In this document: one piece after another, positions 1 through 39,920 of the stretch
Layout of the letters: each line of letters starts with the position of its first letter
How positions within the stretch are numbered: position 1 is the first letter of the stretch
Assembly: GCA_965637545.1 (NCBI GenBank)
Contig: OZ281494.1
Coordinates: 17,360,001 to 17,424,000, forward strand
From: Phallusia mammillata
Lineage: Eukaryota
DNA: 64,000 nt
Direction: 5' to 3'
Made by a program: the position numbers and the translations under genes
Notes under the pieces: model-generated
What the model saw: only the letters and a program-made list of their open reading frames with translations
Databases searched by the model: none
What the model was told of the DNA's origin: nothing

Positions 1-1
1 T

Positions 2-823
2 GCAAGACAGCTGACTACAATAAGCAGAAGGACCTACACTGTTCCGTGTCCTAATTATATTTGGCACATAGATGGAACACATAAGCTCATAAGATGGAAA
101 TTTGTCATACATGCAGCTATGGATGGCTTTAGTCGTCTCATTACATTCTGCCACTGTTCAACCAATAACAGATCATCTGTAGTGTTAAAATTGTTTAAGG
201 AAGCTGAAGCAAAATATGGTTTACCATTACATGTTCGATCCGACTATGGAGGAGAAAATGTGCAAGTGTGGAATTACATGCTAGAAAAGCATCAGAACTA
301 TCATGCAGTTATTACTGGAAGCTCTGTCCATAACCAGCGCATTGAAAGGTTCAACCGTGATATAAACACACAAGTTGTAAATAAATTTTACAATGACTTT
401 TTCTTTCTTGAAGAAAGTAATTTGCTTGACCCAACAAATGATACAGATTTGTTTTGTTTACATTTTGTGTTTTGCCACATCATTAATAAGCGAATCCAGG
501 AGTTTGTTAATGCTTGGAACAAGCACAGTCTTTCCACTGAAAAAAATTGCACTCCTGAACAGTTGTTTCATCTTAACTTACATTTACTTCAACTGCAAAC
601 TTTAAACGATACTGGTAAAATAGATAGTGAGGATATTGTATGCCCAGGTACAAGTTCTGTTGAAGTAGACGCTATTCCCCATTTACCACATGAATGTGTG
701 AGTGAGCTACAGGACCTATTGCAGCAAAACTCTAATCTAGATGGAATTATTTTGTATAAAAATGCAGTCAATAAAACGTTGGAATATTTAATCCGGACAC
801 AACACAATGCTTTGGTAGTGTAA
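2..823 (+). CDS. Integrase core (rve, IS3/IS481-like) DDE transposase, 5'-truncated by the window
   Basis: The frame is open from nt 2 (ARQLTTISRRTYTVPCPNYIWHIDGTHKLIRWKFVIHAAMDGFSRLI...). The catalytic triad is intact: WHIDG (D), RSDYGGEN (D), NQRIERFNR (E). The C-terminal LFCLHFVF...FVNAWNKH...TPEQLF segment is typical of this family. Confidence 0.88.
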   Translation, partial: ARQLTTISRRTYTVPCPNYIWHIDGTHKLIRWKFVIHAAMDGFSRLITFCHCSTNNRSSVVLKLFKEAEAKYGLPLHVRSDYGGENVQVWNYMLEKHQNYHAVITGSSVHNQRIERFNRDINTQVVNKFYNDFFFLEESNLLDPTNDTDLFCLHFVFCHIINKRIQEFVNAWNKHSLSTEKNCTPEQLFHLNLHLLQLQTLNDTGKIDSEDIVCPGTSSVEVDAIPHLPHECVSELQDLLQQNSNLDGIILYKNAVNKTLEYLIRTQHNALVV

Positions 824-1032
824 ATTTGATGCATGAACTAATGTAACAGTTTTTTGATTTGCATGTTTTGAAAACAACACAAAAATGTGCCAGCAAGATG
901 TCATTTATTTCGGGTTTAAATCCAGGTAGTGACCAGAAAAGCACTGGCTAAAAAAGATCAAAAACAAAAGAACACCCAACTAGCCATTTCAAAGGATCCA
1001 AAATATCAGGGTAGATTTGTGTTATATTTCAG

Positions 1033-4000
1033 TTAAGCAACACCAAATCCGGGGGAATTCAGGATTGCAAAATCCATTGCTTCTTTGAAGTTTTCATACT
1101 TGCTGTATCTTGTGGGTACAGTCAATATGTTCGCACAAGTGTTTGCCAAAGGGTACATAGACTCGTTCGAGAACTCAATGGATGGAGTTGGAGAAAAACC
1201 AAGAGGAGGCACTTGATCTGCCCCAGTTGCAAATATTAAAATTTCTTTTATTGAACATAAAGATTCCCCATCTGAAATGAAAGTCAAAACACAAGTCATG
1301 TGTTGTATGCTAATGTGCTGAATGTGAATACCTTCAACATCCAGTATGTAATCCCTCCAGAAGGAAACCGCCCGATTTTCCTGGCATCTTTCGTTGCTTC
1401 CAGGTTCTGATAGATTTAAATTGATGAAAATTGAGTCAACAATTTCTATGCCACTCAATGGTTTATTGTTTTGCCACAGAAAAATATCCTCAAATCCATT
1501 TGGTGCCAATTTTGCCTTATGTAGCAAATTATGTGTCATTAGACCAAGTCTAAACCTTGAAATAAACAAAAACCTCTTACTGTCTCAGTAATATAAATCA
1601 TTGCTTTTAAGCCATACCTGGCCAATAACTCGGTAAGGCGATCCTCTGTATAAAATTTAATTGCTTTTTCAACAATGTCATTTTTGCATGACAGGTCCTT
1701 CACAAATGTAATGGAACCACAAATAGACAAGAAATCATCCATATCTGACAATGCCACATTTAATTCCTCTACTGTATCAGTATTTTTGATCTGTTGACAA
1801 GTTGAATTTATCTTACAAAGTTGACAGTTTAACATACAAATACTATACAATTGAATTAGCGCTTACTTTTGTTAACTTGGAAAACAAGACAGGGTCATTT
1901 ATAGTTGCAAGAGCGTCCAAAAAATTTCTTGATCTATCAAGAACTTGATCATACAATAACTGGGAAAAAAAGCGTGGAGCAGGCCCACCATGAATGATTG
2001 AAAGGGAGATAATACACCCATACACATAATACAGGTCCTTGGCAATTGCTATAAAATAAACACAACTATTAATTTGGTAGTATTTTTCATTCTTAATTTG
2101 CTTCAATATACCGTAACAAAAGTACACATTTTACAAAGTTGTTTGCTAATCAACAAACTGTAGAACTAAGGTATATCTAATGTACTATTATGTACCTGTT
2201 TCATTTCTTGTGAGAATTTTTGCTGTTTCATTTCCTTCAAATATTATGCTGTTTGCCACAGCTTGCATTACTAATCTTAAAAATTCTCTGGTAGGTCCAC
2301 CTGCATCTACAGCACCCTCAGACTGGCCAATATCATCACTAAATTTCACACTCATTCTTGCATTAGCACAAAAACTTTTTCGCTTTATGGCACGGACAGC
2401 ACAGTCCAGAACATTTTGGCGATTGACATTAAAGAAGTTTACTTGACTTTCATCGATGCTGTCTCTAATACACCTTATAGACTCATGAGCAGATAATTCC
2501 TCAACTTGGCACCTTCAGAAACACAGTTAATTAACCTTCTTTGTACCAAATATTGCTACCATGTGTCAAATTCCAAACTCATCGAAAAAACTAACACTGA
2601 AACATGTACCTATCTTTGTTTGGGGTTTCTAGCAATGAAGCCTCAATTGCCTCTTGAATCAGAGTGTCCTCATCAATTTCCTCAGATATCAAGTTTACAT
2701 AATCCCTAACAACATAAGTGCAATTTGGTAACCAATACACAAACATACCTGAAGTTATTTTGTTGTGTGCAAGTCAATTTTAGTAATTACAAATAACCAC
2801 AAAAAATTAAGAGATAAATTTAAGTGTCCACTTACATGTACAAAGAAGGTGTCTGACATGTGCCAGGTTTGGTATTTGAGCACTCCTGTAAACACAAAAT
2901 ATTTTTGCAATAAAAAATAATTTGAAATGTTAGAAAATCTAACTAGAAAGTTTTGCTCACCCCACACTTGAAATCTTCATCTAAAACTGAATTATATTTA
3001 TGCAAAGAAATGTTTGAACATGTTTTGTCACCTTTCTGCAATAAATTTATAAAATTGTCATTCCCTATTGTTTTATGATTGTTAATTTGACATTTACATA
3101 CTCATATTACCTCAACAGTTTTTTCTGTCAAAAGATTCATGGAGGATTTCAAAAGTTGGTGTTCTTTTTGTACAGTGACGTAAATAATGCTTTTACCGAG
3201 TGAAAGCACTGCAGCAGCATCCCATCTAAATGATTCACTTACTTTTGGCTTAACAAGTACTTTCAAACCAGGCAAATTGCTGAGATAATCAAACTGTAGT
3301 AAATCTTTTGACAATAATGGTGTTTGAAATGGAGTAAATTGACTTTTGAAAACATCTGAAATCTCTCTTCTTACTTCCTGTTCAGACCAGCTGTTACTTA
3401 TTGAAATCTTTGCAACTAACCCAATAGCAGCAAGTTCACTTCTGTTTTTTCCTCTTGGTATTTTAAACGCAATGTTGTGCGAGTTGTTTTGTACTTGCTC
3501 CATTATATTTGCAGGTATGCAAATTATAGTTCGGGTGTAATACATTGTTTTTGGTTTTGTTCGTCTTCTACCTCCTTTTACTGCGGTTGGCACATACCTA
3601 GATCCTCTTTGTTTTGTGCACGAGGGTAGTGAATGTTTGTAATCCTGCCAAACATTTTTATTTTTTTCAACAAAACCAACCCAAATAGCCGAATTAACCG
3701 AATGAAAAACACTAACTGTCATATACAAAACTACCTTTCTAAAATCGTCATCATCACTGTCAGATTCTATAAACAACAGCTTTGTTGCTTCATTTCCACC
3801 AGGCCTTGTCACCTAATTTAAAGTACAACATGTTTAAATGATAATGCTAGTGATTATATACATTTAAATGCAAAAAATACCTACAGGGCACAAAGTTTTT
3901 ATTTGTTTTAATTTTTAAGGTGTCAAATACTGAATGATATTAATCCAACAAGAACCATTTGGGAGTGTAAAAATGTTTGGCCTAAAGATAACTTATTTTT

Positions 4001-4208
4001 GTATGGGTGTTACCTAATGTAAATCAAATGGCAGAATTGAAATTTAGTTTACTTTTGATGGTTGTTCATGGTTGGGTGTCACTGGTCCAATTTTATCAGT
4101 TGTGGAAGAGCATGTTGGAGAATCCGAATTGTTGGTTACAGTACCAATAATTGCTGCAGCAAAGTCACCTACAGCTTTTTTTATGTGCTCTTGCAGGTTT
4201 GCATCCAT
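1033..4208 (-). CDS. G2E3-like HECT E3 ubiquitin ligase with a UIM-like motif, 10 exons, about 682 aa
   Basis: GT-AG exons 4208-4053, 3812-3735, 3644-3111, 2885-2836, 2705-2610, 2512-2196, 2048-1867, 1790-1618, 1555-1332 and 1271-1033 join in frame (2049 nt). HECT motifs: DAGGPTREF, SIIHGGPAP, IFATGADQVPPLGF, catalytic PLANTC, terminal GFG. UIM-like segment LIQEAIEASLLE. Confidence 0.85.
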
Positions 4209-4541
4209 ATTATCGTTTCGCCCAAAAAAACGAACTGAAACAAATCCTACGTGATAACGAGTACCTTCTATGTTACACCCACCGGGAGTTCACATAAAAA
4301 TATTTTTTTTCTGGTTTTGGAACCGAGATTTTTCACGCCGTTCGTTCGCTGCATTGCTGATGTTTAACCGTATTTGTCACTATCAGTCCTAACCTGTTTG
4401 GTTATATTTTTTATAAAATGGTACAGTTGTCAATGAACAGCTGATTTCTGAACGAAATCAGAAACGTAGCATGTAATTTAAGCCCCAACACCCTGTTGAT
4501 TATAATGGTTCGGTCCATCACTTAGTTCGTCATGGTTCAGT

Positions 4542-4904
4542 GCTAAATCGGAATGGCATTCCCGTTCTGATTTAGCTAAATCGTAATGATTTAGTTAAAT
4601 CGGAATGGAAATGTTATTTCTGTTCTGATTTAGCTAAATTGGAATGGCATTCCCTTTCTGATATAGCTAAATCGGAATGAAAATGTGACTCTCGTTCTGA
4701 TTTAGCTAAATCGGAATGGCATTCCCGTTCTGATTTAGCTAAATCGGAATGAAAATGTTATTCCCGTTCTGATTTAGCTAAATCGGAATGACATTCCCTT
4801 TCTGATTTAGCTAAATCGGAATGAAAATGTTATTCCCGTTCTGATTTAACTAAAGCGGAATGGCATTTCCGTTTTGATTTAGGTAAATCTGAATGGAAAT
4901 GACA
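4542..4904. repeat. Higher-order array of about 11 near-palindromic 22-mers (TTCTGATTTAGCTAAATCGGAA) with alternating 11- and 17-bp linkers
   Basis: The core GATTTAGCTAAATC is a perfect 14-bp palindrome. Linkers alternate TGGCATTCCCG and TGAAAATGTTATTCCCG, giving 33+39 = 72-bp periodicity. Copies degrade at both edges. Confidence 0.95.
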
Positions 4905-5219
4905 ACAAATATTTTTACAAACGGCGCCCCATAATCTATTGTGTACTAACAATGCGAAAACCCAGACACCTCAAGCGTCACTGGAGAAATGGTGACGTCA
5001 TAAACAGTTAAGACGAATCGCAACACTGGTCAGTGTAATTTGTGCATCAAGTTAAAATTTATTCTGGGCCTTTGGGGCGACATTTGATGTTTATACATAC
5101 ATGTGTAAAATATGTAAATCAATTTCTTGGCTGTTGGTGAAATAATTAAGCATCTGTGATGCGGCCGCCATATATATGATTAGTATAAGGTTTTACGTGA
5201 AAGTAGTTCAACTGTATTG

Positions 5220-7396
5220 TTAAATCTTACCTTTTTTGTATTCTTCCAGCTTGCCTCCCTCTATTGACGCTTTAATATTCGCTGCCACCAAATCAGCTTG
5301 CTGTTGTCCTGTATGCGGCGTTTTCTCCACATCACAATTATTTACATGACCAATAGCAAAAATATTGCTGCAACCTTGAACTTGTAAGTTGGCCTCAACC
5401 TTGATGGCTCCCGAATCTAGCAGCGCATTTTCTGAAGCAAAACAACTCCGTGCAAACTTTTGATCATGCATCTATTATGTGCATGATGTGAATTTTTTAC
5501 CTAGTGCCGGTTTGCAGAAATCGCTGGAAATCGTATATTGGTCACAAGGAACAATTAGGTCCACTTCAACTTCTTTGCCATTCGATGTTTTTACTTTTTG
5601 GTTTTCCAGAAGTTCGTTAAACTTTAAATCATCTGTATTGGTGACACTTTGATCTGTTTGCAATTGGCAAGTTAGTTTCCACTGTACAAACACTTTTTTT
5701 GCTAAAAAGTATAAGCTGTTTAAATATCTTTTGCGGCATAAGTAAAACGCCACTTCCCTTATCATAAAAGTAAAGTTTGCTGGAACGTAAAACGTAGCAC
5801 TCAAATCCCCGAAACATTGCACTTTTTAAGTCATGATTACAATCAATGAAAAAAATAATAACCGCAAATATCAGTTTGAACCACACCAACCGACCTAGCA
5901 TCAGATCAACGTCTTTTCGTTGCAGTTTTTCATTTAACTCGTCTTGAAACTCTTGATTTACGTGTGGTGATGTCAGATTCTTTTTGTGATGAATGATGAT
6001 AACCTGTAAATTAACACACAATAACACACCAGCATGTATCCATTACAATCACTGGTAATCAACATCCACTTGCCTGTTTGTCAGGATAATCCGTCTTAAT
6101 TTCTCCAGCTAGCTCACAAGCAAAGGTGTTTCCCCCGATGCAGGCAATGCGGTGCGCTTTTTTCATCTATGCAATTATGTATTTGAGTTTATTGCAGATC
6201 TGTGAGCAAGCTCAAAACGGGACCCGAATCCGAAAGTACAACCCCAAAACCGACCTAACCCGCTTTTAAAAATAAAGTCCTATTTAAGCCGGAAAGTTAG
6301 TTTAGCCAAGGTGAAATGCAACTCCATACAACACGGAAGTGCTTTCATTTTACATAACAGCGTATGTTCTTTACCGTTTCTGTAAACTCTTTGTACAAGT
6401 GTTTTGCCCCCTCCATTGTGGCATCTTGTTTGTTTTCGTACTTTGCAGGAAATGGTTGAGACGCTCCAGCGGCTATTACCAAGTAGTCGTAGGCGACCTG
6501 AAAAATGTTTTCAGAAGTTCTTTTTTTAAACACCTTTAATAACTCTATAAAACTTAGTTGTGGTAGCATCAGGTAATAGAGATTGGATTCGACTCCAGTT
6601 ATTTGCTATAGGCATATCCACGTTTTTTTTGCTCATAAACTTATTAGAGGCCCCATATATTTAAATTAATAAAGATTTCTTATGGCCAATGCACTCCGAA
6701 ACGATATGATTTTATTGTTACAAGCTCGAAAAAGTGATGGTGCAAATGCACTTTGCTATGATATCAAGCTACGTAGAATGTGCAGAGCAATTAATGGGGA
6801 ATCAAGATTATAGCACGGCAAGGCACAGCACCAAACATTAGCGGATTTTAGCGAAATAGCAATGCTAAATGTTGTCAATGTTCCGGCCTAACCACTACAT
6901 GCTTTGATACGCGGGCTAAATTTTATACGAAATGTGGCATTTGGCTTTAATTTGTTTGCCATAATATTTGAGTTGTAAAAAAACATTACAACAACAAACG
7001 TTTTTTTTAACTGCAGCGGTACAGGATGAGACGCTGACACTCACTTTTTTTCCATTTTGCAACATAACAACATTCTTGTCTTTTTTAATCGCAGTCACTC
7101 GTTGTCTTATGTGGTTGGATATAATCTTGTTAAACGGGATAAACATGTTTTTGTCAAACTCTGCAAAGTATAAAATTGAAAATAATATTTTTCTTACGTG
7201 AACTGTATTCACACTTACCCGGTTCCACTATTGAACGAGCAGATGCCACATTGTGCTGCATACATTCTCCCGGATCAATTAAAGTTGTTTTACAAACGGT
7301 TTCTTTTTGTAACAGGAATGCCAGACGCGTCCCACTGTAGCCACCACCAACTATCAGAACGTGCGGGACTTTAGGCTTGGAATTACCAAAACCCAT
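5220..7396 (-). CDS. AIFM2: Divergent AIFM2/FSP1 paralogue with degenerate NAD(P)H and FAD motifs; canonical last exon not found
   Basis: Starts MGFGNSKPKVPHVLIVGGGYSG (myristoylation consensus plus first GxGxxG). Seven exons join in frame at the same intron positions as the neighbouring copy. The second motif is GGNTFACELAGEIK, and AIGH replaces AIGD. If the last donor is not used, the frame ends KKGKI* at 5220. Confidence 0.8.
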
Positions 7397-8847: not shown

Positions 8848-11817
8848 TTAAGTCTTTGGTGGTTTTAAACCCACATCTCCCCAGACCTTGGACGAAAAAA
8901 GATCTTTGCTTTTCAGATATTTCACCATCACGTTTCCAAGAGTAAATCCTTTTACTTGCCCCGTTCCGCCATTACGACCCAACGGAACCAACATCATAAA
9001 ATCACCTGTATGAAAAATATCCTTAGTACACGCCAGTGAAAGGTTTGTAAACACGTTTAAATTAGGCTACACTTACTTATAGTAGAAAATGTTGGATAAC
9101 ATCTTCAGCTTTACAAGCGTTGCCTTATAAAGAAGACGTGAAATGTGGTCATTCTTACTTGTTTACATTTCTACTGAAAATTAGTCGTATTAGCCCCGCC
9201 ATATTGGAACAAGAAAATAATTATAAGCAGGCCAAAAATGTCATAGCTTTGTAAACACCCTTGAGTCAGAAGCCATTTGATAAAAATCCTGGTCGTTTTC
9301 AAATTTATGTCGTTTTTAGTTTTACCAGCGATGTGTACCCAAGTGGAAATAATAAACTTAAAAGCCTACCTGGAACATAAGGTTTTCTTTTAGAGTCTGA
9401 CGCATCGGCAATCCAGTTTTCAGTCAAGTATTCGGCGTGGTATTTTGCGACGTAACACAATTTTTCTTCCACGATGTTTGTGACGTCACCGATTGCATAC
9501 ACGCCTTCTTGACCTTTGACTTGAAAAAATTCATCGACTTGGAGTTGGCCGGAATCCGTTAACGATGAACCTGCAGTGAAAGTTATTACAGAGTTTTTGA
9601 TGTTAAAAAATGCTACGTTGGAAATGCATTAGCTTACCAAATACGTCCTTGCAAAAATCGGTGTTGGTACGGTTTCCTACGCATGATATTACCAAATCGG
9701 CAACGATGCCTTTTCCACTCTCTGTCTTTACAACTTGACCCTGCATCGACTTGTTCAAACTGAGCTCGTTCATGTTTTGTACGTGTTCACCTGCAAGTAT
9801 AGGCATATAACCGAGAGCTTTTGATTTGTAGTGATATTTTGGTTGTTACTACTAACCAAACATAATCTTAACTCCTAGTTCTTCAAGCCCAGTTACTATT
9901 GCTTCCTTTACATCCGTTTTCAGCTTTTCTGATCCCAAGTAGTTCTTTGACTGAATTAGCGTAACCTACAAAGAAAAAGTAGCCATCAGTCTCGTTCACA
10001 AAACTTGAGGTAGAGGTTGTTTTGAACCGTTTACCTCGTGTGTAGGAAATTCGGTTTTTATTTCGCCAGCTAATTCCACGCCAACTGGTCCTCCGCCGAC
10101 GCAGACTACATGATTCGACTTTGCAATCTGCAAAACCAGAAAAGACCGTAAAATGTATTTCTACCGCTGTAAACAATCAACAAATATGATGATGATCATG
10201 ATGATGATCATAGCCTACTGTATTTTGGCCAATTTAATTACTAAACAATCTAATCAACCAGGACGTAAAGCAGGCTTACTCAACTATCATCAGCAACGAT
10301 TCCATTAATTAAAGTTATTCAATTTTGCGATAATGTGAAATATGTCCAAGGATGGTGGAGCCATTTTTTTTCTTTTTGTGGCATTTTTTGAAAACAAAAA
10401 TGACTGATTAGTTTAATAAACTTTCAAAAACATTTACAGTTTTAGTTTTTTTGTCAAAATGAATTACCTCGTCAACAAAGTCGTCGTACACTTTTATACC
10501 TTCCTCAATAGATACGTTCGGATGAGTTGAAACAATTTTTCCGGGAAATGGCGAAACTGTACCCGTAGCTATGACCAAATGAGTGTAGGTAATCTGCACA
10601 TTAGGAAACGGATGATCAACAACAGGGATACAATATCGTAACGTTTGTTTACACAACTGATATGAAAAACATAACCATGCACTCACGCTGTTATAAAAGC
10701 TACGTTGTATATTTACCAACCTTCACGCCACTTTCAAGTATGACCGTTTTATTTTCGTGATCAATTTTCGCAGCTTTTCCCCGAACAAATGAATCGCCTG
10801 CGATTTCTTTCAAAGGGACGAACACCTTTTTAGCATATCCTGCAATGAAATCGCAATGAAGTCTTAAGAAATAGCGGTTGGCAAAATGTTCAAGTCAAAA
10901 ATTCAAGTCAAATGTTCAAGTCAAACATTCGTAACACGGATTTTACGATTGTAGACATGGTTGTACGTCACATAACACGGTTTGTCTGTCAATAGAACAT
11001 TTGAATTTGTGACAAGAATTCGGTCACACAAACATCCAGTTAACATCCATCAATTGCATTTGTCCAAACTGATCTACTCTGGGTAAATGGTCTTTTGGGT
11101 AATCTCTGTTTTTAGATCAACGTCTTTAACACGCGATTTCGTAATTGTAAACTTTATTGGTAGCGCCATGTTGGTGGACAAGCCCGTAATTGCTATGCAC
11201 GCATATTTTAGAACTGTTAGCTTGGCCCCATTAACAATGCCAAGTCGGGTGTAAACTGACCAGATCTTCTTTTGAATAAATGTCGTTCTCTCTTTAAATA
11301 TTGCTGACTCGTCTTCAGTAAATATAAAGTGAACAATTTTGGAGTAGGAAGCTCCACTGTGCATTTCGCTTTACCGTTAAAATCCCTGTACTTCGTGTGT
11401 TTATATTAATACATTGGCTTAATTCTGTCATAGTTTCATAATAACATAATTGTAATCATACAAATGCAGTGGCGTTCTACTTTAATTCAGGTTAGACAAC
11501 AAAATAAAACTCACGTGCAACCTTATGTTTAGCGTGTTAATTAAACAGGATTCAATTACTAGCTGATATTGCTAAAACATTAGATGTCTATAAAAAGCAA
11601 AATAGGTCGCAACATCTCATGTGTCGATTTTACCTTTCTGGACACAAGCTCGTAAAGCAGCGACACAGTGAATCATGGAATCTTTGGGATCAATTACGGT
11701 TACTTTACAGAAGTTCTTATTCCTGAGTAGGGTGGTAAGATATGCTCCGCCGTAGCCTCCTCCTACTATTACCACGTGCATGTCGTCTTGAAACGGGACG
11801 GAAGTAACGGCACCCAT
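8848..11817 (-). CDS. AIFM2: Ferroptosis suppressor protein 1 / AIFM2, canonical copy, 8 exons
   Basis: Motifs: MGAVTSVPFQDDMHVVIVGGGYGG, LVIATG, VCVGGGPVGVELAGEIKTEFP, YAIGDV, and last exon LVPLGRNGGTGQVKGFTLGNVMVKYLKSKDLF. All match known AIFM2 motifs and exon phases are consistent. Confidence 0.92.
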
Positions 11818-13959: not shown

Positions 13960-16900
13960 ATGGAATCAAGGCATAAAAAGAAACGAAGATCATCGGTACA
14001 GCATTCTTTCATAAATTACAGCATTCACTTGACCAAGACCATGTTTTTGTTATAATGTTTGTCTGTAATAGTTCTTGTTCTGATTGCTGCATCTTAAGCC
14101 TTTGTTTTCACAGATATTAAAAAGTCGGAAATCTCTAGCTGATGTTGACTCTAATGCTGTTGACATAAGCATGGTGAGCTTAAATTAAACCTCTTTTCTT
14201 AAATTAAACCCAACTCTGTGACAGGAAGTGTGGTGCTTATACTAGAAACCCGATTTCTCCAGACCCTCTCAATCCTGTTTGGTTCCAGTTTGCCTGAACA
14301 ATTTTACTGTTCTAAAATGTATATTTTTGTTGCACAAGATGCATGCACCACTTAAATTAGAGCCATTGTGCTGACCTAAGTTTAAATATATATAAATGAT
14401 TTAGTCCCCCAAAATAAAAAGGAAATCAAACAACCACCTGACAGGGCTGCAATAAAATCTTTTGAACTTTACACATTCTCATTACAAAACCTACTAAAGA
14501 TGAATTTTGAGACACAATTACATCATAAAATGTTCCCATGTTTTCTCAAAAAAGATTTTTCCTAAATCAGTAAAAAACCTTACTTATACCACCCACCTGG
14601 ACTTTGAGGTAAACATGTGCTACAACATTTTCGGCAGCAACATAACAACTACAACTTTTTTATTGAGTATTAATTTCAAATCCTTATAAATGGTGCAGTA
14701 TTTATTTGTGTTTAATTTTTTACAGACTGAAGAAGACCGAAAAGGTTTAAAGCGTAGAGTGAGCTTTGCCAACACCTACCAAGTCAAGTAAGTTATTACC
14801 TGACAACCAATGTTTAAATGTCATGTAAAAATGTTGTTTTTAACTTCAAAAGGTTTAAATTATCTATCAAGCATTAACTCACTGCCTGCAATGATAAATT
14901 AGGGATAAAAAAATTACTATATTGTAGAAATGTTTTTACAATTTCGATACATTTGTTTTTTATCTGTATTTTTGATGTTATGTTCCTTTTGTAATAGTTA
15001 TTTCTTGTTCATTTTAGGGAAATTTCTAGGGTTGCTGATATAGCTGAGAAGTGGCCTGATCCAACCTCCCATGTTGGTAAGGAAAAACAACAACAACCTT
15101 ATAACATATATAATATACATTATACATTATACTGTTACTGACATGATTTCATTGTTTACAAGATACAACCAACATTAGTGATGCATCAAAGCTAAGTTGC
15201 GCTGTTCCCACCAAGAAACCGTCTGGAGAACCAGATGCAAGCAGTCTGTCATCACTTCTTCTGGCACCATTAGTGCAGCAAACATGTCCAGCGTCAAGCT
15301 CAAATGCAGTATGCCATTTTAGCACTAAGTTTTAGTAATAAAACTTGCTTGTTGATTGTTACACAACATGTCCTGATGACTCCTGAACATTATCAAAACT
15401 AAATAAGTTGTTCCTCAATATCTTAAGCTTTTTTGTTGCAGCTAAATGAAACAACTGGATCAAACACGGATTTGACTATGGTGACTTCTACTGCATTGAG
15501 CCATCCACAATCCATGATTTCAGATTCAAGTGACATAAATTCTGCATCTGGAAAGGAAGTTCCTTTTAATGGCGACTCTATGATATCCTTACAACAACCA
15601 CCTGTAGTGCCAACATATATGGTAAAAGAAGAAATTAATGAGGAAGAGCCTGGCTTTCCATTGAATTACATGAATGAAGATGATGATGATGGCATTACAG
15701 AGACCTTCGATAATGCCCCACTACCTGCATTTTTGCACACAACTACTCAAGGAGGCTCAAACAACAGAGCTGCTACAATGCCACTTTTATCACAGTCCAG
15801 TCCTTTGAAAGTTTGTGAAAGTGAAGGATACAGCACCTTGCACTCGAGCATTGGTTTGACAGATAGTATGCCAAACAAATCACTTCCTCCACTGACAGCA
15901 AGGCATACTGGTGCTCAAACACCTGTCAACAATTCAGTTTTGTCAACATTCATGTTGCAAAGCAGTAATGAAGACCAGGAACTAAACAACACAGTTTTTC
16001 TTGATGAAACTGTGGATTTGACAAGACAAATTCCCTCAACATCTAGTCTACTGGCAAATAATGATCACTCATTTGCAGGACCTTCATGGTTACAGGAAGC
16101 AAAAGGATTAAATCGATCACTGAGAAGTGGGTTAAAACAGAGCATAGAAAATGAAACTGGTGATTACAATTGTGAAAATATGGAGATTACCTGTAAAATC
16201 ACATCAGTAATACAGCAACATGTGACAACACCTTCTGATACATGTTCAGAAAAAATATCTGATTCTCACACTGCTGTGCTTAAAAGTGGTTTGACCCAAT
16301 CCCGTACCTCAGTATGTACTGACAAAAATGACATGGAGTTTACTTGTGTAATCACGAAGTCAGGCACAAACATTGCAGGTGATTCTTTGGATCCAGATGA
16401 TAACCCACCACTTCTGTCATCAAATGCATTTAGTGAAAATGCTGCTGCTACAAATGATTCTATGGAATTTACCATGACACAGTCCACATTTCCAGACACT
16501 CATCCAAATGCAGGCAATGAAATAGCCAAGTTTCTGGCACTTGATCCAAAAGAGGGTGAATCAAGCATTGTAGAGTTATCACCAGAAAACAGGGTAATCG
16601 CAACTGATACACTATATGTAAGCAGCCAAAAAAGTAGAGATGCTACTGTGGACAATAATGAGAAAAGCGACACAGACACAATGGGCTCCTCAGGTAATGG
16701 TGCAGACCAGGAAGTGTCAACGCATTTCAGGAAGCTGTCCAAGGCAAGAAATTCAATGGGATTGTATAAGCGCAACATAATACAGTCGTCTCAGAATTTC
16801 GGCAGGACTTTAGATACAAGTCATTTTAACCAAAACAATGACAATGAAAGTTTTAACCTTTCAGCTTCTGCTAGTTCCAGTCCACCGTTTTACCACTCCC

Positions 16901-19900
16901 CAAAGGAACATGAACTTGTGTCACTACAATCACCAGAGAAGTACACTGATAGAATGCTGTCGTCTAGCATGGTTGCTGAAGATGACATGAATGACTTGGT
17001 TGCATCTGAAGAAATTCTGACTGAGGAGTGCTATGATGAAGAGCAAGAGTGTTCTTCACATTCGATCTTGGAGTCCAAGAATGAGGAAAACATGTTTAAA
17101 TTTTCACCACTTGAAACTTGTGAAGACAAAAAATGTGAACTGTTTGAGAACAGTCCCGTTTATGGTTCAACATCAAAAGTGGAAAAAAGGTCCATATCTG
17201 AGTTAAATAAAGACAACCAAGATGAGGATCTTGATTCTGACATAAGTAAGAAGCTGTGTCTTGATATTTCTGATAATGTGGCTTCGGTGGAGGAGTGTGG
17301 CACGAGTGAAGAGCTTGAACCAACCACCAAGCCTAGAGAAAGGTTAGGATTTTTGGATTTAAAATTTTGTTTGGTTTATATTTTTAATGTAATAAAGCAT
17401 GTTTATAATTGGTCTTCATCTATAAACATGTGATACAAGTTTATTTTGTAGGTTGATTTTTGCCTAAACGCAAAATCAGTTGAATCAAAACATTGAAAAG
17501 AAGTTTGTCAAAGTTGTGAATAATTATGTTTTGCAAAATTGTCTACAGTGAATCCTCTTCGCAAGAAATATCCTCCACACAAGATGCATTGTTCATGCTC
17601 ACATCTATGACGGAACTACAAAAGGACTTAGTAAGTCACCCACAAATAGGGTTAGTTTATGACGTATGGCCATTGTAACATTGTGGTTACTTTTTTGCAG
17701 CCGGACAGTATTGGAATACAAGATTTTTTGCAAAACTACACTGACATACGCTTGGGTTCCTACATCAAGGTATATTGGTTTAAATTTCTCGGTGGTCATT
17801 GATAAATTTAGAAACTTCTATGTCCACTCATAATGTGCAATCACTGATCCAATACATTTGCATCTTTTTTTGCAGACAACTTGCAACAGACCTGTTAAAA
17901 TTCTTAAGGAACTTAAAAGTGTAATGTTTTGTTCTGGTTTTCAAAGGTTGTTTTTTCAGATGCAACTTTCTGTATGTCAGTTTTGTCTTGGTATTGAAGC
18001 CTTTGCAAAAATCAACAATTTAATGGTTATTTTGGAACAAATTTAGTTACCACTTAGTATCCCACGAGAACAGTCCATTGGTGAGTAAACAGCAAAATTT
18101 TGTTCATTAGAGAGACAAGCGACATCAAAGCTTAGTGCCTCACAAGAAACCAGAGACACTGGACGAGTTGGCAACGGCTGTTTTTGTTCATGCTCGAAGC
18201 ATTCCCATTTACACCCAATTTCTGAACTCGATGCAACAGAAAATGGAGAGGTTTGTGTTTAAGTTCAAATTGTTGCCAACAAAGGCCTGTTATATCTATT
18301 GACTGGAATTAAAAAAATATTTTTTCTGAGTTATTGGGAATTAAGCCCATGCATTAGTATCCCTCTCGAGTGAGATAAGCTTTGTCAAGAAATCCCAGTC
18401 AAGTACTCCTTTGGTGCAATATTTTGCATTTCAATTGATTTTTTCATTTTGCTACCAATTTCAACATCACATAGAAAAAAGCTTCTTTAAGTTTTCTAAC
18501 GCGTACTTCTGTTTGTGAGCACCACTAGCTTAAAAAGCCAACAAAACTTCTTTTATAGAAATAGAAAAGTTATGCTGTTTTATGTCAGTGATAAAAGATG
18601 TAGTACTGCTGGGATAATTTTAGCCTGAAGTTTATTTCTAATTGGTGTTCTGAGCTGTGCAAAAATTTTGAAATGCCCTTTTTCCCTTATTTGTGAAACA
18701 TAATCATGTGATTTAAAGAACTTATCTAAACAGATTTTCTTTTTTGTTTTGTTTAGTCTTTCAAAAGATGTGGAATTAATGGAGCAACAGATTCAGGCTA
18801 ACAACACTGAAGTTATGAGAAGCATTCGATTCGGATCAGAAGAAGAAAGTGAAGCTTTAAGGACTGAGGTGGAGAGTCTTGCATCGAGGTGTAAACAACT
18901 TGCCAAAGTAAGACAGAATAAAATAAAGTTCAAAAAATGACTATGCCTTCCTAAAACATTTAAAAAAACTTTAAACACCATTAAAACTAGTTTCTACATA
19001 CTATGTAAACAAAGTAAAAAAAATCGTACTGCCCTTTTTTTGGCACATGTTTAGTTGAATTTTAGAATATGAAATTTGTACTGTTGCTTTGAAACCCTTT
19101 ACTATTTTAGCTTCTGAAACTGTTTATAGCTACTTGGTTGTTGTCAAGGGTTTTCTAGTTTCTTAACATACTGTGTACTTTAATTTTTCTTTATATGACT
19201 TTACAGCTTAGACAACTGCTATTAAAGTTGTCGTAAATTTTTGTTGTATTATCCCAGGCTGAGTGGAAGCGTGACAAGGGAAAATTAAACAAGGCACTTG
19301 CCAATATAAAAGAAGAGACATACACCAACCATCTTGAACCCATTGTCAACCAGATAAACCAATATGGCAAAATTGAAGATTTAATGAGGACAGCTGTTGA
19401 AGATTTGGAAGCAGGTAACCCACTACAATGTGAAAAGACTTATGCAAATTCTAGTACTTATTTGATTATTGCCTATTTATCTACCTGACATCCGGATTAT
19501 CCTTTGCCAGATAAGCATCATTCTGTGCTGAAAATGTATATATTACAACAAATAAGTATTTGACTATTACTTTGGATAGTTTCGCTTTCAGCAAAAAAAA
19601 AAAAATTAAACCCTTTCCACGCTTATACTACTGCACAATTGCCTGGCAAGAGATGAACTTTTTTTAACGGTGTTTTTTTACGTAACGTTAAGACTTTTAT
19701 TTTCCTTTCACAAGCATAAAAACTAGCACTTGTTTTTTGTACTATCATGCAGTTTATGATGGTTTGAAAAATTGCAATTTGTTTTACTTTTTTCAGCCAA
19801 TTCAATTGCGGAACAAGAATTGCAAATCCACCATGAGAGAGGGGAACTCCCTACAGCAGACCAAATCGCATGTTTTCAGAAACAGGAAAAAGAGATAAAC

Positions 19901-35209: not shown

Positions 35210-36127
35210 ATGGTTCCATTTGACCTTGATAAAATGATTGAGATTGCAAAAGAATGCAAATACCTACCAGAATATGATTTAAAGAGACTATGTGATTACG
35301 TTTGTGATCTGTTACTTGAGGAGTCAAATGTTCAACCAGTTAGCACACCTGTGACTGTGTGTGGTGACATTCATGGACAATTTTATGATTTGTTGGAACT
35401 TTTCAAAAATGGTGGTGAAATACCTGAGACAAATTATGTGTTTATGGGAGATTTTGTTGATCGTGGGTACTACAGTTTGGAAACCTTCACTTACTTACTT
35501 ACACTGAAGGCAAAGTGGTCAAACAAAATTACGCTTTTGAGAGGAAATCATGAAAGTCGACAGATCACCCAAGTATATGGATTTTATGATGAATGCCAAA
35601 CCAAATATGGAAATGCAAATGCCTGGCGCTATTGTACAAAGGTTTTTGATCTGCTAACCATTGCAGCAATAATAGATTCAACCATACTTTGCGTTCATGG
35701 TGGACTCTCCCCAGATATCAAAACTCTCGATCAAATTCGCACCATTGACCGCCAACAGGAAATTCCTCACAAGGGTGCCTTTTGTGATTTAGTGTGGTCT
35801 GATCCTGAAGATGTTGAAACGTGGGCAGTTTCACCTCGTGGTGCTGGATGGTTGTTTGGAGCCAAGGTTACAAATGAGTTCGTACATTTGAATGGTCTGT
35901 CGTTGATATGCAGGGCACATCAGCTGGTCCATGAAGGATTTAAGTACATGTTTGATGAGAAACTTGTTACTGTGTGGTCTGCACCAAATTACTGTTACCG
36001 GTGTGGAAACATTGCTGCTATTCTTGTCATCAAGGAAAAAGATGAAAAAGAGGCCAAGTTGTTTCATGCTGTTCCTGACAACATGAGAGTTATTCCAGAG
36101 AGAAACACAACTCCCTATTTTCTGTGA
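35210..36127 (+). CDS. PPP6C: Serine/threonine-protein phosphatase 6 catalytic subunit, intronless CDS
   Basis: 305 aa. The N-terminus [42 protein letters not shown] is PP6-specific. GDFVDRG and RGNHE motifs and C-terminal TPYFL are present. Confidence 0.96.
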
Positions 36128-37214: not shown

Positions 37215-39920
37215 CAGTGTTTCATACCGGAACGGAACGAAACATAATAACGTTATTCGTTCTGAGGAATTTATTTATTTCGTTATTTCGTTCTGGACCG
37301 ATATTTTCATTTCGTTCCGGTCTGACCGAAATAAAATTATAACGGTATTTTTCGGTATTTCGGTCCTTGTGCTTTTTCTACCAAAAACAAACCGCACAAA
37401 CACGGAGTGAAGGAGAGTGAAGTTGAATTTATTATTGCCACTAATATCACACATTATTTCGCAACAACATAATTGCTTCAGTGATGTCCCCTTTCATGCG
37501 GTTGCGTTTGGCTTCCAGAATCAGTTTAAGCCCAGAAAATGATCTCTCTACCGAAACCTGTGTAACTGGTAGCCCCGCTGCCACTTGTGCTACTGCTTTC
37601 ATTATAGAAGAGCTGTTGTTCCAATACTGAAAAAGATCTTCCTTTTTGTCAACCCGCTTGGACTGTTCGTACACGTCGAGGGCGTCATTGAACTCGGTCG
37701 CCTTGGGAAGGTTTCCGTAAGTATTTTGCTCCAAATCTTTTGCTTTCAACAACTTTTCAATTAGGTCATCTTCTGAATCAAATCCTCTATTCCCAGCTCT
37801 TTGGTATCCTTCCGGACTGTTTTGCTCACTGGAAGTGCTGGCGACTGGACTCGTTTCAAGTTGACTGTCGTCTGTAACTTTTTTTAGTTTTAACCACATC
37901 TCGTGCAGCTGTGCTCTTGCGACGCCCTTTTCGGAAGCTGAGAGAAGACAACGGTACCTCGGATCAACATATACTGAAGCAAGTAGAGCTGCGTTGCCAA
38001 GCAAACACTTTTCCCTGCTTCTCAGATTGTTGGCAATACTTCTTGCAAGAGGATTATCATAATCAGATAATTGTGTCTTTAGTTTAATCCAGTGGGCATA
38101 GAACTCCCCTCCAGCAATATTTCGGGTTTGTAAAATCTTGGTTACGTCGAACACCGGTTTCAATGCATCAACAATGCGACGTACATTGTTCCATTCCGAT
38201 TCTGACAAGCAAAGTCCTGCAACAGGAACACCTTGCGTGTTTATTTCGTCAATTGTGTCTCGCAAGTCTAGGACACCACGAAACATCATGTATGTCGAGC
38301 CCCACCGTGTTTCAACATCAAGAACAGCCATTTTTTGCTTTCTGTGTCTGAGAGCCAAACGAACATTTGGTTTTCGGAGAATTTTAGCCACAGCCCTTAC
38401 CTTAACAATCGTGTTGTTTGCAACAGAATCTTTCAAGGCGTCTAAAATAGCTAACTGTAGCGTATGCACAGCACATCTCACCGAAATTGGCCCACCTCTA
38501 GACGTATCTGTTTGTAACAAACACATTTCTATTTCTTGAAGCAATTGTCTGTCGGTTCCGGGACTTTGCCAATCACTGTCATCATTTTCTTCGTCACTGC
38601 TGTTCTGTTCATCTTCTTCAAGATCACGTAGCAAACAACCGCTTTTTATCATATTGCTGCCATTATCAGTGGTTAGTGTATAAACTTGCGACATGTGGAC
38701 ACCAAACAACGACAAAGTTTGAATTATAACCGGAACTAAATCAACTGCTCTGGCACGAGTTGTCATCTCTTGAACGGATAATGTTGCTAAAACAAGTTCA
38801 CTCCCGTTGACAAACTGAACATTAATCCCCATAAAATGGCGTTCCATGCGCGTAGCCAAATCAATTTTCAAAGAAACCAGTTTACCTTTCATTTGCTCGG
38901 TTAAGTTTTCTCGTTTGTGTTGAGCTGCCTCGATCGTCAAATCTCTCATCTTGTTGCGGCCAAGTGTGAGATCTGCTGACTTTAGAAGAGGGTTTAACAT
39001 TTTTTTGACACCAGACGCTTCAAACACTGAAAGAGGGAGACCATTTTTGGTGACCGCTTCTATAGCATATTGCTTAATGTCTTCTGGACATGCTTGAAAT
39101 TGGACATTTACAGATATTTTGTCGGCCTGCTGGCTGTTGTTTGGTTTAAAAAAGTTTTTTTGTTTGGCAAGTTTCTCAGCTTTCTTATTTGCGATGGCAC
39201 TTTTTTTTCTTTGAAAGTCAATCCATTCATCAGCATGGACATTTTTTATGTGTTTTAACATGTTTCCGCCATGAGCCATCCCTTCAAAAACAAATTCGCA
39301 ATGCCTGCATTTTATTTCAACTTTCTGCTTCTTCTTTACTTCAGTAAAAAAATTCCACGCTTGGTTTGTTCTTTTTCGACCCATCCCTTAATCTAAAATA
39401 TCCTGGCAATAATATAAAAACGAAAATCGTAACATGTATCACTGTTATGTTACCAATCATAACCCGCACTTATTCCACTACTTAAACCTACAAAAGTCTT
39501 CTAAAGACAGTTCCACACACAGGCTAAAATATCTAATGACGTTAAATATCAATGCTCATTGCTTACCAACACTAAAATAAGTCAACCAAACGGAGTATAA
39601 GCTAGTTGCAACAAACAAAGATGGTTGTCTGGTGGTTATTACGTCACATAACATGTATGACAAAAGAGATGTCATAGTGATTTGACTGTGATTGTATTAA
39701 AACAAATAAAAACGATGATTTTTAATTGATGAACGAAGCATTTGAAGCAACTATCCTGGATTTTTTTAGAACGAAATACCGAAATAAAAAATAACGGTAT
39801 TTCGTTCCGTTCCGGTATTTTGAATATTTTTTATTTCGGTATTTCGTTCCGGTATTTGGACCAAAAATTATTTATTTCGTTCCGGTATAACGTTCCGTTC
39901 CGTTCCGGTATGAAACACTG
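37215..39920 (-). mobile_element. Apparently intact autonomous hAT (Ac-type) transposon, 2706 bp
   Basis: 25-bp perfect TIR CAGTGTTTCATACCGGAACGGAACG, perfect 8-bp TSD GTTTTTAC, subterminal ATTTCGTTCCG repeats at both ends. Confidence 0.95.
37447..39384 (-). CDS. hAT transposase with BED finger, 645 aa, uninterrupted
   Basis: BED finger (WNFF...CRHC...KHIKNVH), KIDLATR (D), TTDNGSNM (D), CAVH (CxxH), TRWGST, VSVERSFS (E), and a C-terminal dimerisation domain. Confidence 0.93.
   Translation of the reverse strand: MGRKRTNQAWNFFTEVKKKQKVEIKCRHCEFVFEGMAHGGNMLKHIKNVHADEWIDFQRKKSAIANKKAEKLAKQKNFFKPNNSQQADKISVNVQFQACPEDIKQYAIEAVTKNGLPLSVFEASGVKKMLNPLLKSADLTLGRNKMRDLTIEAAQHKRENLTEQMKGKLVSLKIDLATRMERHFMGINVQFVNGSELVLATLSVQEMTTRARAVDLVPVIIQTLSLFGVHMSQVYTLTTDNGSNMIKSGCLLRDLEEDEQNSSDEENDDSDWQSPGTDRQLLQEIEMCLLQTDTSRGGPISVRCAVHTLQLAILDALKDSVANNTIVKVRAVAKILRKPNVRLALRHRKQKMAVLDVETRWGSTYMMFRGVLDLRDTIDEINTQGVPVAGLCLSESEWNNVRRIVDALKPVFDVTKILQTRNIAGGEFYAHWIKLKTQLSDYDNPLARSIANNLRSREKCLLGNAALLASVYVDPRYRCLLSASEKGVARAQLHEMWLKLKKVTDDSQLETSPVASTSSEQNSPEGYQRAGNRGFDSEDDLIEKLLKAKDLEQNTYGNLPKATEFNDALDVYEQSKRVDKKEDLFQYWNNSSSIMKAVAQVAAGLPVTQVSVERSFSGLKLILEAKRNRMKGDITEAIMLLRNNV

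What the first reader, a model, noticed from the sequence alone, without database searches (positions are those of the whole stretch)
1..4904. Candidate transposon carrying its own intact, spliced HECT ubiquitin ligase
Seen: an IS3/rve-type DDE integrase with an intact triad is convergent with a 10-exon, 682-aa gene that has a UIM-like motif and a HECT domain with its catalytic Cys (PLANTC). A palindrome array ending TGACA follows immediately. Known: IS3-family ends are TG..CA, and some eukaryotic DNA transposons carry ubiquitin/SUMO-pathway accessory domains (e.g. Ulp1 in Zisupton and Ginger). I recall Repbase IS3EU elements being described as two-gene elements, but cannot verify what the second gene is. 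Inference: the E3 is element cargo that could degrade host silencing factors or control transposase turnover, which would be a mobile-element ubiquitin counter-defence system.
Basis: partly seen in the sequence, partly recalled or inferred. Interest (0 to 1): 0.85.

Follow-up and report, generated by a model that had tools for sequence, protein, structure and literature searches.

The report
IS3EU-type transposon carrying HECT ligase
The window starts inside a cut-and-paste DNA transposon of the IS3EU/GingerRoot kind whose second gene is an intact, spliced HECT ubiquitin ligase, and the same two-gene unit moves as one element in other aquatic animals, so the ligase belongs to the transposon and is not a neighbouring host gene.

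Summary
Window 1-823 (+) encodes residues 99-371 of a 371-aa HTH + rve/rva_4 DDE transposase with an intact triad. Window 4208-1033 (-) is an intact GT-AG spliced gene for a protein built as N-domain, UIM, HECT, with its catalytic Cys. A 72-bp palindrome array lies at 4542-4904.

The main inference, that the ligase is element cargo, is strongly supported. In two other assemblies the same transposase-then-reversed-HECT pair sits inside multi-copy elements (at least 9 and 4 copies, about 97-99% identical). These have long inverted ends beginning TATG(G/A)GG and perfect 6-bp target duplications in 3 of 3 complete copies. Four further genomes (two teleosts, a coral, one unnamed assembly) show the same convergent pair.

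Two corrections. The ends are TA..TA with 6-bp duplications, as published for IS3EU, not TG..CA.

The counter-defence function is untested. The left end, the target duplication and the copy number in this genome could not be checked. An unchecked note from this scan (s1-382308) reports another such element on another piece of the same genome. I found no paper linking IS3EU to HECT; Repbase could not be consulted.

The parts
1..823 (+). 3' part of the transposase gene (residues 99-371 of 371; stop at 821-823). It is an rve/rva_4 DDE core with D122 (71-73), D179 (242-244) and E213 (344-346). The first 98 residues, including the HTH, lie left of the window.
824..1032 (.). 209-bp spacer between the two convergent stop codons. 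It holds an AATAAA on the minus strand near 905-912, about 120 nt after the HECT stop.
   Evidence: read directly from the sequence
1033..4208 (-). HECT E3 gene, 11 exons, 707 aa. Exons: 4208-4053, 3812-3735, 3644-3111, 3035-2961, 2885-2836, 2705-2610, 2512-2196, 2048-1867, 1790-1618, 1555-1332, 1271-1033. All introns are GT..AG.
   Evidence: Intron positions near aa 330, 436/437, 497/498 and 629/630 coincide with HSP breaks in the relatives.
3111..3644 (-). Exon 3: a 178-aa N-terminal domain with no Pfam family. The predicted fold is alpha/beta and weakly resembles beta-grasp (UBL/RA/DCX-like) domains.
   Evidence: 221 representative clusters at E<=1e-3; pLDDT 88, pTM 0.78; best PDB E=0.017, none <=0.001; matches N-termini of other HECT proteins, E down to 4e-12
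2627..2671 (-). UIM-like motif EDTLIQEAIEASLLE (aa 310-324)
   Evidence: regular expression; conserved in P0163, P0173, L007, L015. Pfam is silent.
1135..1137 (-). Catalytic Cys674 codon (PLANTC)
   Evidence: T-C is conserved in all 8 element-linked HECT genes aligned.
4209..4541 (.). Region upstream of the HECT start codon (presumed promoter and 5' UTR), inside the element
   Evidence: By position only
4542..4904 (.). Subterminal array, 72-bp period (33+39). Each unit carries the near-palindrome TTCCGATTTAGCTAAATC(A/G)GAA. This is the presumed set of transposase binding sites.
   Evidence: The TTCC(G/A)ATTTA core is also the unit of the 13-bp subterminal arrays of the related element, always in the same orientation to the terminus.
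4907..4933 (-). Terminal 27 bp of the element, read inward as TATGGGGCGCCGTTTGTAAAAATATTT. The element ends at 4933.
   Evidence: Unique in the window. It matches the terminus of the ERZ25067590 family at 23 of 27 bases and resembles the TATGAGGTGCCGTTTGTG terminus of the ERZ26868619 family.
4934..4939 (.). Candidate 6-bp target-site duplication, ATCTAT. It is unverified because the left end is outside the window.
   Evidence: Inferred from the 6-bp duplications in relatives

Best explanation
Window 1-4933 is the right-hand ~4.9 kb of a cut-and-paste DNA transposon of the IS3EU/GingerRoot kind.

The element carries two convergent genes. One is an HTH + DDE (rve/rva_4) transposase. The other is an intron-containing gene for a HECT ubiquitin ligase built as N-domain, UIM, HECT. 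The ligase is a conserved element gene, not a neighbouring host gene.

Inferred mechanism: the transposase binds the TTCC(G/A)ATTTA repeats in the subterminal arrays, cuts at the TA-terminated inverted ends, and integrates with a 6-bp target duplication.

The ligase keeps its catalytic Cys in every lineage examined. It most likely acts in trans as an accessory factor that ubiquitinates a host or element protein to favour transposition. That would mean either removing a host restriction or silencing factor, or clearing the transposase and strand-transfer complex so the gaps can be repaired.

Shown here: the gene content, the terminus, and mobility of the two-gene unit in relatives. Inferred: transposase binding to the repeats, ligase activity, the substrate, and mobility of this particular copy.
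For: 1. Both genes are intact.
2. ENA ERZ25067590 (transposase 61% identical): at least 9 copies about 99% identical on different contigs. Each has the transposase (+) and a HECT homologue (-) 38-46% identical to ours, N-domain included. Every copy starts at TATGGGGTGCCATGTG with a different flank. The two ends are more than 140 bp of inverted repeat. The copy on ctg30530 has the duplication TTTAAG on both sides.
3. ENA ERZ26868619: a compact 4.85-kb family with the same two genes, termini TATGAGGTGCCGTTTG, and duplications GTTCAA and TACCAG.
4. The same convergent pair occurs in Notolabrus celidotus, Brienomyrus brachyistius, Desmophyllum pertusum (C-terminal exon only) and GCA_949826985.1.
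5. The window's end at 4933 matches those termini at 23 of 27 bases, and its array shares their repeat core in the same orientation.
6. The catalytic Cys is conserved in 8 of 8 element-linked HECT genes. The UIM is conserved in the fish copies. Intron positions are shared.
7. Published IS3EU features agree: TA..TA ends and 6-bp duplications (PMC10045372); TAYGG..CCRTA ends and a second gene opposite to the transposase in fungi (PMC12730594).
Against: - The left terminus, the target duplication and the copy number of this element in its own genome were not seen, because the element runs off the window.
- The transposase's 90% cluster has a single member, and the next hit is 61% identical. No close paralogue is visible in the protein database.
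- One of eight genomes (Anneissia, L005) has HECT exons upstream on the same strand rather than convergent.
- Substitutions among copies were too few to measure selection.
- The correlation between transposase and HECT divergence is weak (rho 0.37, p 0.056, non-independent pairs).
- No evidence bears on ligase activity or substrate.
Confidence: 0.87

Rival explanations
1. Domesticated pair. An ancient IS3EU insertion became fixed and immobile in this genome, and one or both genes are now host genes. The terminus and array are relics.
For: Only one end is visible. The transposase has no close paralogue in the protein database (cluster of 1, next hit 61%). Both genes are intact and sit in a gene-rich neighbourhood (FSP1-like gene from 5220).
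Against: The 27-bp terminus and the 363-bp array are well preserved (89% matches between units; 23 of 27 bases to a relative's terminus). That is not expected for unused relics. An unchecked scan note reports another such element elsewhere in this genome (s1-382308). Relatives are clearly mobile.
Confidence: 0.08
2. Chance neighbours. A transposase fragment or insertion happens to sit next to an ordinary host HECT gene.
For: HECT genes of this type are numerous in aquatic animals. In Anneissia the arrangement differs.
Against: The same convergent arrangement recurs in 7 of 8 genomes examined. In two of them it lies within the inverted ends and target duplications of multi-copy elements. The window's element terminus lies beyond the HECT gene, at 4933, so the gene is inside the element.
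Confidence: 0.02
3. Functional sub-hypothesis A. The ligase is a counter-defence factor that marks a host silencing or restriction protein for degradation.
For: Long-term retention of an active-site-competent E3 in a selfish element. By analogy, fungal IS3EU and other transposons carry TET/JBP genes proposed to help escape methylation silencing (PMC12730594). The N-domain is variable and modular (absent in the ERZ26868619 family; fused to RING/B-box or Myb/SANT elsewhere), as expected of a target-recognition part.
Against: No substrate, interaction or expression data. The argument rests on analogy only.
Confidence: 0.3
4. Functional sub-hypothesis B. The ligase serves the transposition reaction itself. 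It ubiquitinates the transposase or strand-transfer complex (or nearby chromatin) so it is extracted and the 6-bp gaps are repaired, or it limits transposase dosage.
For: The UIM next to the HECT domain is conserved from this genome to teleosts. Related HECT clusters carry UBX or CUE modules, which elsewhere bind p97 or ubiquitin. Stable DDE strand-transfer complexes are generally known to need active removal (established knowledge, e.g. phage Mu and ClpX).
Against: Entirely inferential. The compact ERZ26868619 family lacks the N-domain, and no UIM was detected there.
Confidence: 0.25

Closest known systems
[quoted passage not shown] 2019, PMC6839031; Kojima and Bao 2023, PMC10045372)
   Same: An rve-like DDE transposase without an HHCC finger. 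TA..TA termini (here TATGG..CCATA). 6-bp target duplications. Long inverted ends. Distribution in fish, corals, sea anemones and other aquatic animals.
   Different: No searchable paper describes a HECT ligase as the second gene. The inverted ends here include arrays several hundred bp long. Clustering of this transposase with Repbase IS3EU entries was not tested.
Fungal IS3EU families with an alpha-kinase gene opposite the transposase, some also carrying TET/JBP (Kojima 2025, PMC12730594)
   Same: A two-gene layout with the second gene in the opposite orientation. TAYGG..CCRTA ends and 6-bp duplications. The cargo is an enzyme that could modify host or element proteins or DNA.
   Different: The second gene here is a HECT E3, not an alpha-kinase or dioxygenase, and the host is an animal. 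An unchecked scan note (s1-375463) says this genome also has an IS3EU-like element with an alpha-kinase.
G2E3-like HECT ligases ('G2/M phase-specific E3 ubiquitin-protein ligase-like', multi-copy in fish and invertebrates)
   Same: A divergent HECT domain of the same broad group by language-model and structure neighbours.
   Different: There are no PHD or zf-HC5HC2H fingers. The N-terminus is instead an unnamed 178-aa domain plus a UIM. It is not a G2E3 orthologue.
Transposons carrying ubiquitin/SUMO-pathway enzymes
   Same: A mobile element carrying an enzyme of a ubiquitin-like pathway.
   Different: Those are deconjugating cysteine proteases, often fused to the transposase. This is a separate, spliced, conjugating HECT E3. 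The comparison is from memory and was not tested here.

Membership tests
IS3EU/GingerRoot DNA transposon | rve-like DDE transposase with an intact catalytic triad | tested here: met
   Pfam rva_4 3.7e-72 and rve 3e-09. D122 and D179 are invariant and E213 is at least 90% conserved in 24 homologues.
IS3EU/GingerRoot DNA transposon | No HHCC zinc finger upstream of the core; an N-terminal HTH-type region instead (PMC10045372) | tested here: met
   P0001 residues 1-34 match HTH_7 (3.9e-06), with no zinc-finger family reported. The sequence upstream of D122 has no HHCC pattern.
IS3EU/GingerRoot DNA transposon | TA..TA termini (TAYGG..CCRTA in fungal families) | tested here: inconclusive
   The right end in the window is ...GCCCCATA at 4933. 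The left end is outside the window. Both ends are met in relatives (TATGGGG and TATGAGG).
IS3EU/GingerRoot DNA transposon | 6-bp target-site duplication | tested here: inconclusive
   Not testable for the window copy (candidate ATCTAT at 4934-4939). Met in 3 of 3 complete related copies: TTTAAG, GTTCAA, TACCAG.
IS3EU/GingerRoot DNA transposon | Terminal inverted repeats | tested here: inconclusive
   Only one end is in the window. Relatives have more than 140 bp of near-identical inverted ends plus arrays.
IS3EU/GingerRoot DNA transposon | Transposase clusters with Repbase IS3EU / published GingerRoot sequences in a tree | not testable with these tools
   Repbase and the GingerRoot data set are not available here.
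HECT-type E3 ubiquitin ligase | HECT domain (N-lobe and C-lobe) | tested here: met
   C-lobe exon 7.5e-13, 49 bits against a cut-off of 23.9. N-lobe exons are weak (4.5e-05; 0.0057). The full-length homologue P0173 aligns over aa 113-678 and hits AREL1, HUWE1 and other HECT structures.
HECT-type E3 ubiquitin ligase | Catalytic cysteine about 35 residues from the C-terminus | tested here: met
   Cys674 of 707 in PLANTC. Conserved in all 8 element-linked genes aligned.
HECT-type E3 ubiquitin ligase | Ubiquitin thioester formation and transfer | not testable with these tools
   Needs a biochemical assay.
G2E3 orthologue | N-terminal PHD / zf-HC5HC2H fingers | tested here: not met
   No such domains in any exon or in homologues P0163 and P0173.
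UIM (ubiquitin-interacting motif) | Match to the UIM profile or consensus | tested here: inconclusive
   Fits the consensus e-e-x-x-hydrophobic-x-x-A-x-x-x-S-x-x-e and is conserved in fish homologues. Pfam reports nothing even at E=10.

The most novel reading that the evidence does not exclude
A whole lineage of IS3EU/GingerRoot transposons, spread from cnidarian-grade animals to teleosts, has kept its own HECT ubiquitin ligase for a very long time. It uses the ligase to rewire host ubiquitination in its favour, either by destroying a host silencing or restriction factor or by clearing the transpososome. These elements would then also be the source of the large, unexplained families of 'G2E3-like' and orphan HECT genes in fish and marine invertebrates.
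Probability: 0.3. Interest if true: 0.85.

Novelty: new variant of a known kind. Interest (0 to 1): 0.64.

Why it matters
Transposon-encoded accessory enzymes are rare clues to how mobile elements deal with host control. Known examples are TET/JBP, Ulp1 proteases and alpha-kinases.

A conjugating HECT E3 carried stably inside a DNA transposon across distant animal phyla would be a new class of such cargo. It gives a concrete, testable handle: transposition assays with and without the catalytic Cys, and substrate capture.

It also offers an explanation for the many orphan HECT genes annotated in fish, coral and mollusc genomes. It warns annotators that these 'host' E3 genes may be transposon genes.

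The shared terminus and the TTCC(G/A)ATTTA repeat give a practical signature for finding such elements.

Tried and rejected
- Fetching the window's left flank through its own transposase protein: not on record.
- Context look-ups for HECT homologues P0173 and P0163 and for transposase P0088: not on record.
- Selection test among ERZ26868619 copies: only 3 synonymous and 0 non-synonymous changes in the transposase, which was ascertained by identical protein, and 1 synonymous and 3 non-synonymous in the HECT ORF parts. Too few to interpret.
- Co-divergence of transposase and HECT C-terminal exon over 8 genomes: rho 0.37, p 0.056, pairs not independent. Suggestive only.
- Identifying the host species through an intronless PPP6C-like ORF: too conserved to place.
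- Pfam for the UIM: nothing.
- PDB fold search for the N-domain: only weak beta-grasp-like matches, none at E<=0.001, so I do not name the fold firmly.
- One literature query was wasted by a loose setting. Searches for IS3EU+HECT, HECT+transposon-encoded and HECT domain+Repbase returned nothing. G2E3+transposon+integrase also returned nothing.
- The full spliced protein could not be submitted to the remote tools because it has no reference, so domain work was done exon by exon and through homologues.
Full report
**What is in the window**

The window is eukaryotic DNA of about 36% G+C.

*Transposase.* Frame 2 of the plus strand is open from base 2 to the stop at 821-823. It matches Pfam rva_4 (3.7e-72) and rve (3e-09). 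The protein database holds the full product, P0001, at 371 aa. The window carries residues 99-371. The missing N-terminus has a resolvase-type HTH (HTH_7, 3.9e-06). In an alignment of 24 homologues, D122 and D179 are invariant and E213 is at least 90% conserved. These lie at window 71-73, 242-244 and 344-346, with D-57-D-34-E spacing.

*HECT gene.* I assembled it on the minus strand as 11 exons between 4208 and 1033. Every intron is GT..AG and 71-240 nt long, and the product is 707 aa. Both versions are in frame, and only RNA data can decide. The last exon matches Pfam HECT above the curated cut-off (7.5e-13) and carries Cys674 in PLANTC. Aa 310-324 (EDTLIQEAIEASLLE) fit the UIM consensus, although Pfam reports nothing for that exon.

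*Array.* The array at 4542-4901 has a 72-bp period built from 33- and 39-bp half-units, with 4.4 copies and 89% matches. Its near-palindromic core occurs 17 times in the window against 0 expected.

**Is the ligase part of the element?**

This was the key question, and comparative data answer it.

*First related family.* The closest transposase outside this genome, P0002 (61% identical), occurs as identical copies on four contigs of ENA assembly ERZ25067590.
- A tblastn with my HECT model finds a homologue downstream on the opposite strand in all four. It is 38-46% identical, N-terminal domain included.
- The copies are about 99% identical over more than 12 kb, interrupted by nested insertions.
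- Fetching the far side through an 86-aa ORF gave seven more loci with the same sharp boundary.
- Every copy begins with TATGGGGTGCCATGTGTAAAATTATTT next to a different flank, at both ends in inverted orientation.
- The two ends are near-identical for more than 140 bp and continue into arrays of a 13-bp unit, ACTTTCC(G/A)ATTTA.
- For the copy whose two ends both lie on contig ctg30530, the six bases outside each end are TTTAAG.

*Second related family.* In ENA ERZ26868619 the element is compact, about 4.85 kb.
- The ends are inverted TATGAGGTGCCGTTTGTG termini.
- The transposase (10001-11167, +) and a HECT gene (11317 to about 12830, -) lie inside.
- Two copies have perfect 6-bp duplications, GTTCAA and TACCAG.

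*Other genomes.* The same convergent pair is present in:
- the wrasse Notolabrus celidotus, where an annotated 763-aa HECT gene sits on the opposite strand;
- the mormyrid Brienomyrus brachyistius, unannotated, with stop codons 74 bp apart;
- assembly GCA_949826985.1;
- the coral Desmophyllum pertusum, for the C-terminal exon only.

Only the crinoid Anneissia locus differs. Its HECT exons are upstream on the same strand.

*Conservation of the ligase.* The catalytic T-C is conserved in all eight element-linked genes. The UIM recurs at the equivalent position in both fish loci and in fish proteins P0163 and P0173. HSP breaks in the relatives coincide with my exon junctions near aa 330, 436/437, 497/498 and 629/630. 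The gene has therefore travelled with its introns.

**The element's end in the window**

Read inward from 4933, the sequence is TATGGGGCGCCGTTTGTAAAAATATTT. It is unique in the window. It matches the ERZ25067590 terminus at 23 of 27 positions and resembles the ERZ26868619 terminus.

The window's array contains TTCC(G/A)ATTTA eight times. This motif is the core of the relatives' 13-bp units, and it always has the same orientation relative to the terminus.

ATCTAT (4934-4939) is the candidate target duplication. The FSP1-like gene starts its last exon at 5220 on the minus strand, so the insertion lies just downstream of that gene.

**Comparison with what is known**

- Kojima and Bao (PMC10045372) state that complete IS3EU families have TA..TA termini and usually 6-bp duplications, lack an HHCC finger, and form one lineage with GingerRoot.
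- Cerbin et al. [quoted passage not shown]
- Kojima 2025 (PMC12730594) describes fungal IS3EU ending TAYGG..CCRTA, with an alpha-kinase gene opposite the transposase and sometimes a TET/JBP gene between them.

All of these structural features are met here or in the close relatives. Only one end can be seen in the window, and I could not place the transposase in a tree with Repbase entries.

A HECT ligase as the second gene is not mentioned in any of these papers. No paper in the library contains both IS3EU and HECT. Repbase Reports cannot be searched, so curators may already have recorded the ORF.

**The ligase itself**

The N-terminal exon defines a family with 221 representative clusters at E<=1e-3. 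Full-length members carry HECT (P0163, P0173). Others have the domain with RING + B-box (P0151) or Myb/SANT, and one protein is 12 tandem copies of it.

An AlphaFold model built on 50 sequences is confident (pLDDT 88, pTM 0.78). PDB matches are weak and point to beta-grasp domains (RA, UBL, SUMO, UBX, DCX), with a best E of 0.017. AlphaFold DB matches are the N-termini of other HECT proteins from corals, sponges and fish.

Language-model neighbours are multi-member 'hypothetical' HECT clusters from Cnidaria, Chordata and Mollusca. Some have SAM, CUE or UBX modules, and G2E3-like proteins are more distant. The protein has no PHD fingers and is not a G2E3 orthologue.

**How it probably works**

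*Shown:*
- a two-gene, TA-ended element with 6-bp duplications that is mobile in relatives;
- an intact DDE transposase;
- an intact ligase gene with its catalytic Cys.

*Inferred:*
- the HTH of the transposase reads the TTCC(G/A)ATTTA repeats;
- the ligase acts in trans to favour transposition.

I rate two substrate ideas about equally. The other is service to the reaction itself, in which the transposase or strand-transfer complex is ubiquitinated so that it is removed and the gaps are repaired, or so that dosage is limited. The conserved UIM and the UBX/CUE modules of relatives fit the second idea slightly better. The modular, variable N-domain fits the first. Neither is tested.

**Limits**

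- The left end, the target duplication and the copy number in this genome are unknown.
- The transposase has no close paralogue in the protein database, so a fixed or domesticated copy cannot be excluded.
- Two unchecked notes from this scan report, on other pieces of the same genome, another IS3EU-like element with a UIM-HECT gene (s1-382308) and one with an alpha-kinase (s1-375463). I could not read those sequences, so they are leads only.

**Verdict**

The cargo inference is strongly supported by relatives. The terminus is corrected to 4933 and the end rule to TA..TA. The function is open. This is a new variant of a known kind of element.

Noticed in passing
window 37447-39384 (-): A 645-aa open frame with a BED zinc finger (2.2e-04) and a hAT C-terminal dimerisation domain (1.8e-08). 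It is probably an intact hAT transposase.
   Followed up: partly
window 35210-36127 (+): An intronless 305-aa ORF, 85-89% identical to metazoan protein phosphatase 6 catalytic subunit (Metallophos 5.4e-45). It could be a retrocopy or a single-exon PPP6C gene. No identical entry was listed in the protein database.
   Followed up: partly
window 15433-17433 (+) and 55584-57152 (+): Long open frames of 666 and 522 aa with no Pfam family at E<=0.001.
   Followed up: no
protein P0121 (2095 aa): A protein made of 12 tandem copies of the same 130-150-aa N-domain that precedes the HECT domain here (E 4e-243, 31-40% identity per copy).
   Followed up: no
proteins P0151, P0245, P0168: The N-domain also occurs with RING + B-box (P0151, which still aligns across the HECT region) and with Myb/SANT-like DNA-binding domains. 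The fusions to PAICS enzymes (P0158, P0168) look like gene-model artefacts.
   Followed up: partly
L001/L009, contig ctg30530 of ENA ERZ25067590 (about 630699-657221): This copy of the related element spans about 26.5 kb because of nested insertions. Its 13-bp terminal arrays vary in length between copies (24 versus 46 units). About 6 kb left of the transposase and an 86-aa ORF near the HECT-side end are conserved between copies but unexplained.
   Followed up: partly
L019:8975-9000: One copy of the compact family has its first 19 bp (TATGAGGTGCCGTTTG...) duplicated in tandem at the left end.
   Followed up: no
L005 (Anneissia japonica) 23-6360 (+): Two HECT C-terminal exons (2986-3198, 6142-6354) and an N-domain piece lie upstream of the transposase on the same strand. 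This departs from the convergent layout and may reflect neighbouring or rearranged elements.
   Followed up: no
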